Source: Euprymna scolopes (lineage: Eukaryota). From it: 64,000 nt of DNA. Where the stretch lies: NCBI GenBank assembly GCA_053919585.1, contig CM132792.1; one strand, 5' to 3'. Both the position numbers and the translations under genes were made by a program. The notes under the pieces are model-generated. The model made no database searches, was not told the origin of the DNA, and saw nothing but the letters and a program-made list of their open reading frames with translations. Of the stretch, positions 12,366-16,430 are shown piece after piece (position 1 is the stretch's first letter; each line of letters opens with the position of its first letter).

Positions 12366-12831
12366 ATTGCTCATGTCGAAGGATTCCAATAATACAATAA
12401 TACTATGATGCTTTGCATTTTTACTGAATTTTCCCTCATACCTAACCTTATCTTTTGCTTTTACTATACTATTTCCATCTGTACTACTCACTCGAGTATC
12501 CCGTTGTCACATTGCACAAACAATGTGTCCAATATCAATCAACCTTCTAACCTTTCATCTGCAACATTTATTTCTATTTTGCTTTAATTATTTTTCAATT
12601 TTTTCTTCTATTTTTTACAATTTTTTAAAAATTATCTTTAATTTTAATTGTATAACTCAAGATTTTACATTGATTGTGCACTAACTGATAATAATTAATA
12701 AAATAATTTCCATAAGTACACACCACTAAGCGTTTCCGCCACGCATCTGCCGCCCATTCCTGTTAAAATCCCAATCTAGCATATTTAAAGTATCAGGATT
12801 ATTTAAAACAAAAATCATCCATTCCCTATCT

Positions 12832-13238
12832 TTGAACACCCCCTCCCAGGAGGGGGACCTTCGTGGCCTTTTGGCCAAGATCAAAGCGTAGTATCTGTTC
12901 CGGTAGATACTGTAAGTAACGACCATATGTGGGAGCAACCCCACATATAAGACCTTGGTCAATGTAGGGGCAACCCTTCATATCAATTGTCACTATCCGG
13001 GGGAGTTGGCCCCCATTTCCCCTTCATTCCTCAGATTAAAAAATCGACCTTGTTCCTAATTTACTCGGTGGGGGAGCAAATAAATACCAACCCCACATAC
13101 CAGTGTGCAAATCACTATCGAGCTTCCATTTCCCACCTCTCGAATGCTGGTCCTTTTTCCCTTCACTCTCCTCCCCTCTCTCCACATTAAAAAACGACCT
13201 TGCCTAATTTGCTCAGTTGGGAAGCAAATAAATACAAT
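12832..13238 (+). mobile_element. Insertion with a U2 snRNA-derived head (SINEU-like or chimeric retrocopy) flanked by a 15-bp direct repeat
   Basis: ATCCATTCCCTATCT at 12817-12831 and 13239-13253. U2-like segment starts at 12857; the element ends in a hairpin plus AATAAA. Confidence 0.7.
12857..13014 (+). ncRNA. U2 snRNA-derived sequence (variant or pseudogene; no canonical Sm site)
   Basis: CTTCGTGGCCTTTTGGCCAAGATCAAAGCGTAGTATCTGTTC matches the U2 5' end (stem I and the GUAGUA branch-point recognition sequence at 12888). It is followed by hairpins at the IIa/IIb/III positions and a loop-IV-like ATTGTCACTA. Confidence 0.75.
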
Positions 13239-13250
13239 ATCCATTCCCTA

Positions 13251-13317
<67 letters not shown>

Positions 13318-14420
13318 ACACGGATATTGCTAGAGTTGCATCTTTATTTTGTTACTTAGTCCATCGCCTCCTATTCAGATGAGAAGGAGTAGACTTCGAA
13401 TATCTGGCATAAAGAGTTTTGATAACCTCTACGCCCTGTATTTTATCGTCTTGTTTAAAATGGATGACTAAATCTATATGCAGCATTATATATTTTTCTA
13501 TATTCAATATAGTTTCTCTTGTATTCAAGCTCCACCTGGATGTCGTTGTTTTTAAATATTTTATTTAAAGAAATATTATATACATCTGGGATCCTTTTTA
13601 TATACCTATACACAACAGACGATTTAAAGTTATATCTCCTATATTTTATACTACCCTAATGGGTAGAGCGTTTTTTTTAAATTAAATTTCTATGATTATC
13701 GAATGTATGCATTCGTACTTAATAGTTAGATCTCTGTTTCACTTATTGACAATGCAAGGCTCTAAGAAAGCACCCTTGTTATGGACGTGCACCAAAAGGA
13801 GAGAAATATAATTTTATTATAAGTGGAACAGCTCGATATTAACTGATGCTTTCTGCACGTTTACGAGGCCGGTGTCAGCAAAGTTAGGAGAGGAGTTCAT
13901 CGTATGACACTAAGACTGGTAATCACAATATAGAAAAATATATTTTCGAGTACCAAATTTCACTCGTCTTGATTGCACTGGGTCCGTTTTCCTATGCCCT
14001 TAAACGATTAACTTTTGAATGTAAAATGAGCAGGCCTTTTAAAATAGTGCATTTGAGCGCATGCTAAAATATAACCAGCAGCAAAGGTTGGTTAGATCAC
14101 GAAAGGATTAGCAACGACAATAGCTGAAAAAAAGCGCATATTCAAATAAAGAAGTGTCCGTGAGAAGAAAAATAGAAAAAAAAGGAAAACAATGCACCAC
14201 GTGATCGGGAGAAGCAAAGTACCCGTGGTCAGCAAGTGGTTGGATGAAGTAGAAACGCTACCAGACTAGATGGACATGTGCAGAGAATGACTATTTAAAT
14301 GCTGTCGAGAGGGGAGAGTAGCGATAATATGAATGTATTTTTAAAAATGTCGACACGGATTTTTATTTCTTTACTTCTTTTGTAACTGCAACGTTACAGT
14401 CTCACTTTTGTCACAGCCGT

Positions 14421-14476
<56 letters not shown>

Positions 14477-14639
14477 ATTGAATCACGATAAATTTGACAT
14501 ATCCTTCATAGCTTAAACGGGGAGTAACTCCCATAGATCAAATAAATAAGCTTACTTTGAAAATAAATTAATCACGACATACATTAATTTTTAAATAAAT
14601 TAAACAAATTAACTGAAGATAAGGGTTAATATGAAGTTC

Positions 14640-16430
14640 ATACTAGCTTTTTAACTTTATATTTGTAAGAAATTCCAAGAGTTCTCCGCAAACTAAGCAT
14701 GTGAAATGTGTTCAGTTTCTGTTCTTTGTGGCTGTAGAGTGTCCATGCTTTGCTGTGATACAGATGGATGTTGGTGACACTGGCCTCCGAGATGATAAGG
14801 TGTTTATTTTCCCACATCATAATTGTCAATTAAACAAGAGTTGTGGGTGCCTTCACAATGGGCTTATTGAGTTCTACATCGAGAGATATGTTTTCTGAAG
14901 ATATTGGAATTGATTGATTACATATAAGCACTGTCGAATTATACTGATGCTGCAAGATATGGCTCGTGACGTGGATTAAGATGAGGCTGCATTCTTTGCA
15001 AACGGTGAAATACCTTCGCAGAATTTTGGTCAATAATAGCAACTTGTCGGACCTTTGGTTTGGATCGAGTGCGGTTGATGCTGAAGAGACGGGCTCCGAT
15101 CTGGAACGATGCTAAAGTCCGTTTTCTAAAGAATTTAATGCATGTATCAGGAGAAGTACAAAGAAAATGTCAAATAATGTGGAACCATGCACGTATCCTT
15201 GTAGTGTATTGTATGCGCTTGTTACCATACGTCTTTTTACACCTAATTCAGCAAGCTGTCTGTATCGAATTCCTCGGTGTAAATCATATAGTCGTGACAT
15301 AACGCTATAAGGCTCAGGAGCTTGGGAGGGCAACCAATGAGAGGCAGTATCTTAAATAGTCCATCTCCACTGACTGGGTGGAATGGCATAGTGAGATCAA
15401 TGAAGACAACGTAGAATGATCCGTTTTACACTTCTCCTGCAGCTGGCATACTAAGAAGATAATGTTAATTGGGTGCGACAACCACACTGTGATTTATGGT
15501 ATATTCTCTTAGCACAAACCTGCAGTTTCGCTAGATGCGGGAAGCCATTTGCCAACGGTGTTTAGTAGCGATGCACCCCTATAATTATTAATTGTGTATA
15601 AGATAACTATTTTTGCATTTATCATATTCTCAGGGACAGCGCGTTCTTCCCAACAACGTGACAAGACTGTGTATTATGATTTTAGGGGAAGAGACTTGCA
15701 ACTCTTGATAATGTAACCTGCGATGGAATCAGTAATCGTTTTTTTTTTCGATGTAAGTTTGCCAATCGCCTAGAAAACATCTTCGATGGTTGTTGGTATG
15801 TCAACCGCAAGTAATTTTTCGTAGTGTGGGATCGTATGAAAGGCGATCTGGCTTACGTTTTTATTCTATTGAATAAGTAGTTCTCCACACATCTGTAAAG
15901 TTGTTGACAGAATTTCTCCTATCTTGGAATCTATGCGAGCGGCATTTAACGCACTTGAACCGGTTGCTTTCATAAAGCTGTCATGCATTACTTTTATATT
16001 TCCAGTTTCTGCAGTTTTTTGTTGGATGGAGTTGCATTGTTTGTTCTAGTACTCATTTTACACATGCAGGGATTGATAGCCTTAACCGAGATGTTCAAAG
16101 GGTTATTAGCGAGTCTTTACTTGGATTAATCTTGTATTTCTGAAGAACCATCTTGTGTTCTAGTTTCTTAGAGTTCGTATCGTATATACTGTTTGTTCAC
16201 CCTTTATTCTCTCAAAGGTTGAGATTACAGCAGCATGTGCGATCTTTCTTCAGATCTTTTTTGGAATTTCTATAGCTGAGCCGTCTGAGTGAATACAGAA
16301 AGGGAAACAAGTCCTATAAAATTTAGAAGTGTATCCACGCAAGCAGGTCAGAGCGGTACTTTCCACAGTCTCTACCAGCTGCTGCAGTAAATGCTGTCCT
16401 AGACATACTGGTCTCACTATCCATCCGAAG
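14640..16430 (-). mobile_element. Decayed RTE-clade (BovB-like) LINE, RT region
   Basis: Minus-strand fragments QLQEKC, VFIDLT..F..VS.DGLFKILPLIGCPPKLLSLI and WTLYSHKEQKLNTFHMLSLRRTLGI. Confidence 0.85.

What the first reader, a model, noticed from the sequence alone, without database searches (positions are those of the whole stretch)
12817..13253. U2 snRNA-headed retroposon (SINEU-like) with a 15-bp flanking direct repeat
Seen: a 407-bp insert between two exact ATCCATTCCCTATCT copies. After a short GC hairpin comes a U2-like 5' end with GUAGUA, then a stem with a TGTAA loop (12902-12924; IIa position), ATATGTGGG/CCCACATAT (IIb position), GACCTTGG where the Sm site GATTTTTGG would be, a GCAA-capped hairpin (12962-12981) and loop-IV-like ATTGTCACTA. 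A non-U2 tail ends in a hairpin plus AATAAA. Known: snRNA-headed SINEs (SINEU) were described in crocodilians, and Utopia and Keno LINEs target U2 genes. Inference: an independently arisen U2-derived SINE, or a non-autonomous partner of a U2-associated LINE, in an apparently invertebrate genome. The stems are preserved despite sequence change, which suggests selection on RNA structure.
Basis: partly seen in the sequence, partly recalled or inferred. Interest (0 to 1): 0.82.

Follow-up and report, generated by a model that had tools for sequence, protein, structure and literature searches.

The report
U2-headed retroposon copy, off-target insertion
This 407-base insert is one copy of a very abundant short jumping element that starts with 42 letters copied from U2 spliceosomal RNA, and that same stretch of U2 is where a group of active LINEs in this genome prefers to insert.

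Summary
An exact 15-bp direct repeat (12817-12831 and 13239-13253) brackets a 407-bp insert. Window 12859-12900 matches nt 5-46 of the host's own U2 snRNA at 38 of 42 positions (Rfam U2, 43.9 bits).

It is not single-copy and it is not the real U2 locus. The genome search gave 9,254 first-look candidates on many chromosomes. The genuine U2 (161 bits) sits in a 764-bp tandem array elsewhere.

The U2 likeness stops at nt 46. The supposed IIa, IIb, Sm, III and IV equivalents have no statistical support, and the family shows no covariation.

The insert is a composite. It has a 27-nt hairpin leader, the U2 head, a body and a tail, followed by a second, 5'-truncated unit with a related tail. One target-site duplication encloses both units.

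Across the family, 37% of tails abut U2 nt 40, which is the published Keno/Utopia site. The genome holds active L1/Tx1-type LINEs with an apurinic-type (APE) endonuclease. These LINEs insert into U2 heads, and one intact copy splits a genuine U2 gene right after nt 47.

The head is therefore best read as a U2 target-site flank that the element carries with it. This copy landed off-target.

The exact LINE that mobilises this family was not found. The scan had already met this family on other pieces of this genome.

The parts
12817..12831 (+). Left copy of the 15-bp target-site duplication, ATCCATTCCCTATCT
   Evidence: Exact repeat read. Recovered as the only non-repeat flanking duplicate.
12832..12858 (+). 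27-nt non-U2 leader with a GC hairpin (12839-12856). It is the 5' end of the retroposed RNA.
   Evidence: Fold. As a 36-nt stretch it folds at -15.4 kcal/mol, z -4.6. Locus L002 carries the same leader, also directly after its own target-site duplication. Other subfamilies have hairpins of different sequence at the same place.
12859..12900 (+). U2-derived head, equal to host U2 snRNA nt 5-46. It holds stem-loop I and the branch-point-pairing GUAGUA, and an uninterrupted GTAGTA|TCTGTTC site.
   Evidence: Rfam RF00004, 43.9 bits. 38/42 identity to host U2. BLAST of U2 nt 11-46 gives 94%. It shares the host-specific extra A in GATCAAAG.
12901..13031 (+). Family-specific body of unit A, a chain of local hairpins. 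One at 12889-12912 pairs U2 nt ~35-44 with downstream sequence. Hairpins with GCAA-type loops lie at 12925-12948 and 12962-12981. The copy lacks about 19 nt that most copies have.
   Evidence: Fold (z -2.74). Alignments. No U2 homology.
13032..13089 (+). Tail of unit A. It holds a degraded copy of the 17-nt block shared with LINE 3' UTRs (13046-13062), a hairpin (13060-13080) and the end AAATAAATACCA. There is no poly(A).
   Evidence: The block GGCCTTGTGCCTAATTT matches 17/17 between near-consensus family copies (L009, L014) and the 3' UTR of the LINE that sits in a genuine U2 gene.
13090..13238 (+). Unit B, a second, 5'-truncated unit of a related subfamily. It starts inside the loop of the first GCAA hairpin (ACCCCACATA...) and has its own tail (13183-13238).
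   Evidence: Self-BLAST. Alignment with L002 and L030. The same kind of junction recurs in other loci.
13239..13253 (+). Right copy of the 15-bp target-site duplication

Best explanation
Window 12832-13238 is a retroposed, non-coding copy of a very abundant family of U2-headed, SINEU-like short retroposons. It was inserted by target-primed reverse transcription at a site outside U2, and this produced a 15-bp target-site duplication.

The RNA that was copied carried a hairpin leader, U2 nt 5-46, a hairpin-rich body and a tail without poly(A). A second, 5'-truncated unit lies inside the same duplication. It probably arrived in the same event, when the reverse transcriptase jumped from a broken RNA to the 3' end of a second RNA.

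The family is mobilised by LINEs of the L1/Tx1 group with an apurinic-type (APE) endonuclease, which nick U2 sequence as Keno does. The head is not a promoter-bearing small-RNA gene. It is the piece of U2 that lies 5' of such a LINE when the LINE sits in a U2 gene. That piece was captured and is now carried along, so every copy brings a new landing site, and copies stack head-to-tail.

Shown: the duplication, the copy number, the extent of the head, the site preference, and the existence and target of the LINEs. Inferred: how the head was captured, which LINE is the partner, and the template jump.
For: - Copy number and spread: 9,254 first-look candidates, with 93 scored matches on about 30 chromosomes at 77-91% identity.
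- Age: unit A differs from the family consensus by 6.1%, and many copies differ by only 1-3%.
- Extent of the head: host U2 nt 5-46, with nothing detectable beyond.
- Retroposition of the whole insert: one exact 15-bp duplication encloses leader, head and both units. In L002 the same leader starts directly after a different duplication that encloses a four-unit array. Other duplications are 17-18 bp long.
- Site preference: of 102 tails, 38 are followed by TCTGTTC, which is host U2 nt 40 onward. This equals the junction published for Keno and Utopia, whose downstream U2 starts at nt 39 in U2 without the host's extra A (PMC4640811).
- Seamless 5' joins: about 65 occurrences of AAGTGTAGTA almost all continue into TCTGTTC, so there are no broken left halves.
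- LINEs, first family: about 7.4 kb, with Exo_endo_phos and RVT_1 domains. It gave 15,776 first-look candidates, and dozens of copies keep an intact 1170-aa frame. In all 29 loci examined (27 by exact motif) its 3' end is followed by U2 nt 27/29-46 and then by the bodies of at least four different U2-headed families, or by the LINE's own 5' end.
- LINEs, second family: it has intact ORFs of 880 and 1145 aa. ORF2 carries Exo_endo_phos, RVT_1 and zf-RVT, and its best solved relative is human L1 ORF2p at E 3.9e-71. One copy splits a genuine U2 gene as U2 1-47 | LINE | U2 22-199. Many copies are 100% identical over the 230 residues searched.
- Head boundary: it falls at nt 46/47 in every family seen.
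- Tail: near-consensus family copies share a 17/17 block with that LINE's 3' UTR.
Against: - No LINE ending in the family's own tail (...GCAAATAAATACCA) was found. The two LINE families end differently and abut U2 at nt 21|22 and about 28|29, not at 39|40.
- This copy is not in U2. Four off-target duplications show no common motif.
- The element starts with a non-U2 leader and lacks U2 nt 1-4. Transcripts therefore do not start at the U2 +1 position, and simple co-transcription from a U2 promoter does not describe today's source copies.
- The composite could also come from a nested insertion joined by homology.
- Weak collinear matches between the body and the 3' half of U2 (GACC..GGTCAA, ATTG.CACT, GGAGTT) cannot be excluded as remnants.
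Confidence: 0.78

Rival explanations
1. The head, and perhaps the whole body, comes from U2 snRNA itself. The LINE reverse transcriptase switched template from a LINE 3' end onto U2 snRNA, which is Kojima's model for crocodilian SINEU. The body is then a much-decayed, internally deleted U2.
For: This mechanism is the one proposed for SINEU (PMC4494074). SINEU-3 is an internally deleted U2. Weak collinear matches between the family consensus and the U2 stem III/IV region appear in the same order as in U2.
Against: The collinear score is not above shuffles (152 of 1000), and Rfam gains nothing from the body. Four SINE families and two LINE families all leave U2 at nt 46/47 and continue differently. 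That boundary is a true insertion junction in a genuine U2 gene. There is no Sm site.
Confidence: 0.14
2. The two-unit insert is a copy of a dimeric source element, or the result of a later nested insertion into an older copy, and not of a template jump within one event.
For: L002 has the same leader and the same junction ATACCA|ACCCCAC. About 20 matches cover both units. Homology-joined nested insertion explains the arrays at U2 nt 40 well.
Against: Second units are heterogeneous in type and in starting point. In 102 tails, 8 are followed by a unit starting at ACCCTTCATA and 3 by one starting at ACCCCACAT, both inside GCAA loops. This argues against a single source copy. The two halves of unit A are about equally diverged, roughly 5.5% and 7% by my eye count on the alignment.
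Confidence: 0.4
3. It is a variant U2 gene or another structured RNA gene kept by selection.
For: The unit folds better than shuffles (z -2.74). Stem-loop I and GUAGUA are intact.
Against: It falls below the Rfam threshold and lacks an Sm site and U2 stems IIa to IV. There are thousands of decaying copies without covariation. This copy has a 19-nt deletion that removes one arm of a family hairpin. The real U2 genes are elsewhere.
Confidence: 0.02
4. It is a satellite or segmental duplication spread at the DNA level, not by retroposition.
For: Copies often lie head-to-tail. Arrays with a period of about 194 bp exist.
Against: Different 15-18-bp duplications flank single inserts and whole arrays at unrelated sites. 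Units are 5'-truncated with constant 3' ends. Only one copy lies in this 64-kb window.
Confidence: 0.03

Closest known systems
SINEU of crocodilians (Kojima 2015, PMC4494074)
   Same: Both are short non-coding retroposons (<500 bp) whose 5' end is a piece of U2 snRNA, with thousands of copies. Tandem copies and composite subfamilies occur in both, and some subfamilies carry 5' extensions of 30-40 nt. Neither has a recognisable pol III promoter, and both contain runs of T. The partner LINEs belong to the Tx1 group, and some of those LINEs carry the same snRNA head. Crocodilian Tx1-Mar clusters with Keno.
   Different: SINEU ends in poly(A), whereas this family ends in AAATAAATAC(C)A. SINEU and its LINEs land in a Mariner transposon, whereas this family lands in its own U2 head. 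SINEU also uses U1. SINEU was detected only in crocodilians, whereas this is an invertebrate genome. I could not compare the sequences.
Keno (Tx1 clade, APE endonuclease) and Utopia (NeSL clade, restriction-like endonuclease), the U2-gene-targeting LINEs (PMC4640811)
   Same: The family's preferred 3' junction, GTAGTA|TCTGTTC, is the same U2 position as theirs. The LINEs found here sit in U2 sequence, one of them in a genuine U2 gene. They carry an APE endonuclease as Keno does. Tandem insertion is known for Utopia in wasps.
   Different: The element studied here is non-autonomous. The two LINE families I found abut U2 at nt 21|22 and about 28|29. Most of their targets are U2 heads of other transposons, not U2 genes. 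Clade membership in the Tx1/Keno sense was not tested by phylogeny.
R2 and R1 elements of rDNA
   Same: The RNA carries upstream target sequence that can guide a seamless 5' join. Reverse-transcriptase template jumping is documented for R2.
   Different: Those elements have different targets and enzymes. They do not spread their target with them.

Membership tests
SINEU (snRNA-headed SINE) | 5' head derived from U1 or U2 snRNA | tested here: met
   Host U2 nt 5-46 equals window 12859-12900 at 38/42. Rfam U2 gives 43.9 bits.
SINEU (snRNA-headed SINE) | Short, non-coding, dispersed and multi-copy, flanked by target-site duplications | tested here: met
   The insert is 407 bp and units are about 230-260 bp. 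There are 9,254 first-look candidates, and duplications of 15-18 bp.
SINEU (snRNA-headed SINE) | 3' poly(A) tail | tested here: not met
   All 28 aligned copies end in AAATAAATAC(C)A, directly followed by the flank.
SINEU (snRNA-headed SINE) | Shares target preference with, and is mobilised by, Tx1-group LINEs | tested here: inconclusive
   Both the family and L1/Tx1-type APE LINEs prefer U2 heads. Their junction positions and 3' ends differ, and no LINE with the same tail was found.
SINEU (snRNA-headed SINE) | Sequence relationship to the crocodilian families beyond the U2 part | not testable with these tools
   No SINEU sequences were available.
Non-autonomous derivative of a Keno-like U2-targeting LINE | Insertion at the U2 site GUAGUA|UCUG | tested here: met
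   Met for the family: 38 of 102 tails are followed by TCTGTTC. Not met for this copy, which sits at a non-U2 site.
Non-autonomous derivative of a Keno-like U2-targeting LINE | 3' end shared with the autonomous LINE | tested here: inconclusive
   Only a 17-nt block is shared with the LINE 3' UTRs, and the terminal 30-70 nt differ.
Non-autonomous derivative of a Keno-like U2-targeting LINE | Partner has an APE endonuclease and an L1/Tx1-type reverse transcriptase | tested here: met
   ORF2 has Exo_endo_phos, RVT_1 and zf-RVT. Its best solved relative is L1 ORF2p at E 3.9e-71. ORF1 has a CCHC knuckle. No phylogeny against Keno was made.
Genuine U2 snRNA gene | Sm site and stem-loops IIa, IIb, III and IV; Rfam score above threshold | tested here: not met
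   43.9 bits against a threshold of 46. The 3' part gives no hit. The real gene scores 161 bits.
Classical pol III SINE (tRNA, 7SL or 5S head) | Head from tRNA, 7SL or 5S RNA with an internal promoter | tested here: not met
   No such Rfam match in 11000-15000 at E<=10. The head contains TTTT.

The most novel reading that the evidence does not exclude
The U2 head is a portable landing pad. It is a fossil of the target flank of U2-homing LINEs, and SINEs and LINEs alike now carry it. Every insertion therefore seeds a new target, and the elements multiply their own niche to tens of thousands of sites in a 5.9-Gb genome. The same logic would explain where the snRNA heads of crocodilian SINEU and of their Keno-related Tx1 LINEs came from. 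Those heads would be leftovers of former U2 targeting, not products of template switches onto snRNA.
Probability: 0.45. Interest if true: 0.75.

Novelty: new variant of a known kind. Interest (0 to 1): 0.6.

Why it matters
In the papers I could search, snRNA-headed SINEs are described only from crocodilians, and how their heads arose is an open point in that work. Here an invertebrate genome holds a young, very abundant U2-headed family side by side with intact U2-homing LINEs. One of those LINEs sits in a genuine U2 gene with the same nt 46/47 boundary as the heads. That makes the origin of such heads testable, and it shows a transposon that carries its own target.

There is also a practical point. 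A recent paper says decapod cephalopod genomes contain almost no SINEs (PMC13218726). If this genome is of that group, which I did not verify, families like this one are hidden among the unclassified repeats.

The copy at hand is an ordinary, slightly decayed member of the family. Its value is that its clean duplication shows what the retroposed unit contains.

Tried and rejected
- Searching the genome with the Rfam U2 family failed three times.
- Two pattern searches found nothing because my patterns lacked the host's extra A.
- I looked for reverse-transcriptase frames in the 30 SINE loci. This led, through a degraded LINE in L041, to the two LINE families.
There is therefore no RNA evidence for or against co-transcription.
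- The off-target site looks a little like the U2 site (A|TCCATTCC against A|TCTGTTCC). Three other duplications do not, so I dropped that idea.
- The long 5' module seen in some copies is not related to the spacer upstream of real U2 genes.
- Covariation within the family is absent.
- The organism's name could not be obtained, because the run labels are coded.

Full report
**Observation**

Reading 12500-13600 shows ATCCATTCCCTATCT at 12817-12831 and again at 13239-13253, with 407 bp between the two copies. The insert begins with a GC hairpin and then a sequence that Rfam's U2 model matches at 43.9 bits (E 1.1e-6, gathering score 46; window 12855-13011). In that alignment only model positions 1-46 are near-perfect.

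**The real U2 and the extent of the likeness**

A 66-nt U2 5' sequence located a tandem array with a 764-bp period on another chromosome. Rfam scores its 199-nt gene at 161 bits. The host U2 has an extra A (GAUCAAAGUGUAG), and the insert has it too.

- Host U2 nt 5-46 aligns to window 12859-12900 with 38 of 42 identities.
- Beyond nt 46 nothing is detectable. Window 12905-13100 alone gives no U2 hit at E<=10.
- Local alignment of the body to U2 nt 47-199 scores 15, against a shuffle mean of 15.3.
- With the family consensus the collinear score is 13.6 against 10.8+-2.8, and 152 of 1000 shuffles do as well.
- A copy only 0.8% from the consensus scores 38.7 bits. That is less than the 48 bits of genuine U2 nt 1-39 alone.

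The IIa, IIb, Sm, III and IV equivalences are therefore unsupported, and there is no Sm site. A few collinear words (GACC..GGTCAA, ATTG.CACT, GGAGTT) keep a remote U2 ancestry of the body from being fully excluded.

**Copy number and family**

The 407-bp insert has 9,254 first-look candidates in the 5.9-Gb assembly. The 93 scored matches lie on about 30 chromosomes at 77-91% identity. Only one copy lies in this 64-kb window.

Twenty-eight units align over about 244 columns. The consensus head reads AAGTGTAGTATCTGTTC, exactly as in host U2. Unit A of the window differs from the consensus at 14 of 229 positions (6.1%), and it lacks about 19 nt, a deletion shared with locus L021. Many copies differ by only 1-3%, so the family is young.

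**Anatomy of this copy**

- 12832-12858: a non-U2 leader with a hairpin.
- 12859-12900: the U2 head.
- 12901-13031: the body.
- 13032-13089: the tail, ending AAATAAATACCA with no poly(A).
- 13090-13238: a second unit of a related subfamily. It starts at ACCCCACATA, inside the loop of the first GCAA hairpin, and ends in its own tail.

The single duplication encloses everything, so the leader and head were part of what was reverse-transcribed. Locus L002 has the same leader directly after a different duplication (TCAATGAAGGCTCCT) that encloses a four-unit array, and it has the same junction between the first two units.

**Structure**

Unit A folds into a row of local hairpins at -85.2 kcal/mol, z -2.74. 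Across 28 copies the covariation term is +0.05, and 2 of 53 pairs show double changes.

One feature does vary in a compensated way between subfamilies. Eight of eleven leaders that are not simply the tail of a preceding unit form a hairpin that ends 2-3 nt before the head. The arms differ between subfamilies, for example CCCCCTC/GAGGGGG against TTCTTCTTC/GAAGAGGGA. I have no explanation for this.

**Where the family lands**

Of 102 tails in the loci I hold:

- 38 are followed by TCTGTTC, which is host U2 nt 40 onward;
- 5-6 by U2 nt 27 onward;
- 8 by ACCCTTCATA and 3 by ACCCCACAT, both positions inside GCAA loops of the body;
- 9 by a fresh full head.

The first junction is the one published for Keno and Utopia, where the downstream U2 starts at nt 39 in U2 without the host's extra A (PMC4640811). 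Nearly all of about 65 AAGTGTAGTA words run on into TCTGTTC, so interrupted heads leave no broken left half. The 5' joins are seamless. This is what one expects if the incoming RNA's own head pairs with the target's head.

**The LINEs**

A degraded LINE next to a SINE stack (L041) led to a family of about 7.4 kb.

- It has Exo_endo_phos and RVT_1 domains and a weak CCHC in ORF1.
- It gave 15,776 first-look candidates, and dozens of copies keep an intact 1170-aa frame.
- In all 29 loci examined (27 by exact motif) its 3' end (...TTTAATATCTC) is followed by AAAGTGTAGTATCTGTTC. After that come the bodies of at least four different U2-headed families, or the LINE's own 5' end.

In the genuine U2 array, one gene is split as U2 1-47 | 7.6-kb LINE | U2 22-199.

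- This LINE has intact ORFs of 880 and 1145 aa.
- ORF2 carries Exo_endo_phos, RVT_1 and zf-RVT, and ORF1 a CCHC knuckle.
- Its best solved relative is human L1 ORF2p, E 3.9e-71.
- Many copies are 100% identical over the 230 residues searched.
- It is 70% identical in DNA to the first LINE family over ORF2.

These are LINEs of the L1/Tx1 group with an APE endonuclease, as Keno is and Utopia is not. Their 3' UTRs share with near-consensus family copies only the block GGCCTTGTGCCTAATTT (17/17). Their termini and junctions (21|22 and about 28|29) differ from the family's (39|40).

**Mechanism**

Every U2-headed family seen, SINE or LINE, leaves U2 at nt 46/47. In a genuine U2 gene that boundary is the 5' insertion junction of an intact LINE. 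The simplest reading is that the head began as the upstream target flank of a U2-resident LINE and is now part of the transcript. It gives homology for the 5' join, and it re-creates the target wherever the element lands.

Today's SINE source copies are not simple U2 co-transcripts, since they start with a leader and lack U2 nt 1-4. The rival, a template switch onto U2 snRNA (Kojima's model), explains the shared boundary less well.

For the two-unit structure I favour one event with a jump from an RNA broken in a hairpin loop to the 3' end of a second RNA. The two recurrent non-U2 starts both lie in GCAA loops, and they do not resemble the U2 nick site. Nested insertion with a homology-guided join is not excluded.

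**Comparison and novelty**

Crocodilian SINEU shares several features:

- the U2 head;
- small size;
- tandem and composite forms;
- 5' extensions;
- the lack of a pol III promoter;
- partner LINEs of the Tx1 group, some with the same head, that cluster with Keno.

It differs in three ways. It has poly(A), it targets a Mariner transposon, and it was detected only in crocodilians. Later papers that I could search repeat that distribution, and none links U2 to a cephalopod or mollusc SINE. The poly(A) criterion fails, so I file this as a new variant of the kind, not as a member of SINEU.

Earlier agents of this scan reached similar readings on other pieces of this genome. I took from them the idea that the head is a landing-site flank, and I tested it with my own loci. 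One of their notes says real U2 genes carry no such unit. I found a LINE, though not a SINE, inside one.

**Limits**

- There is no RNA evidence.
- The organism's name is not known to me. Its size (5.9 Gb) and its 46 or more large contigs fit a decapod cephalopod, but that is an inference.
- Copy counts are first-look numbers.
- The junction statistics come from loci chosen by similarity, not from a random sample.

Noticed in passing
window 13254-13313: A (TA)n microsatellite of about 60 bp starts directly after the right target-site duplication. It causes spurious Rfam microRNA hits (mir-1277, mir-297).
   Followed up: no
L073 (G000:C9:168875500-168885100), U2 on the minus strand: In the genuine U2 tandem array (764-bp period), one U2 gene is split after nt 47 by a 7.6-kb LINE with intact ORFs of 880 and 1145 aa. 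U2 resumes at nt 22, an apparent 26-bp duplication.
   Followed up: yes
L072 (G000:C1:196860300-196868400) and pairs on C7, C16 and C19: The first U2-homing LINE family occurs as head-to-tail tandems with a 7.4-kb period. Each copy is joined to the next through U2 nt 29-46. Dozens of copies keep an intact 1170-aa frame.
   Followed up: partly
L021:1366-1500, L028:1299-1424, L018:2369-2499 (minus), L030:952-1079, L007:983-1123, L029:1990-2137 (minus): A conserved 5' module of about 135 nt precedes some units. It starts with a hairpin and TATAAG. It contains a second U2-like head that lacks TGTAGTA. It is unrelated to the spacer upstream of real U2 genes.
   Followed up: partly
window 12839-12856; L026:1745-1780 (minus); L002:1925-1960 (minus); L003:1926-1961 (minus): The 5' leaders of different subfamilies all form a hairpin just before the head, but with different, mutually compensated arm sequences. 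Similar C-rich/G-rich hairpins occur in the 5' UTRs of both LINE families. Their function is unknown.
   Followed up: partly
L009 and L012, repeats with a period of about 194 bp: These are arrays of seven or more short units of another U2-headed family (…CAGATGCTGCACTTAAGAT…). Each unit ends in the same tail followed by TCTGTTCC.
   Followed up: no
alignment A1, columns 8-19: Stem-loop I of the head comes in two forms, GGCC-TTTT-GGCC as in U2 and GGCC-TTCG-GGCC. The second form removes the only run of four T in the head.
   Followed up: no
L045-L047, L052, L053, L063 just after position 3385; L057, L065, L069: At least two more families of short elements share the U2 nt 1-46 head but have unrelated bodies. 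This suggests a whole guild of U2-headed retroposons.
   Followed up: no
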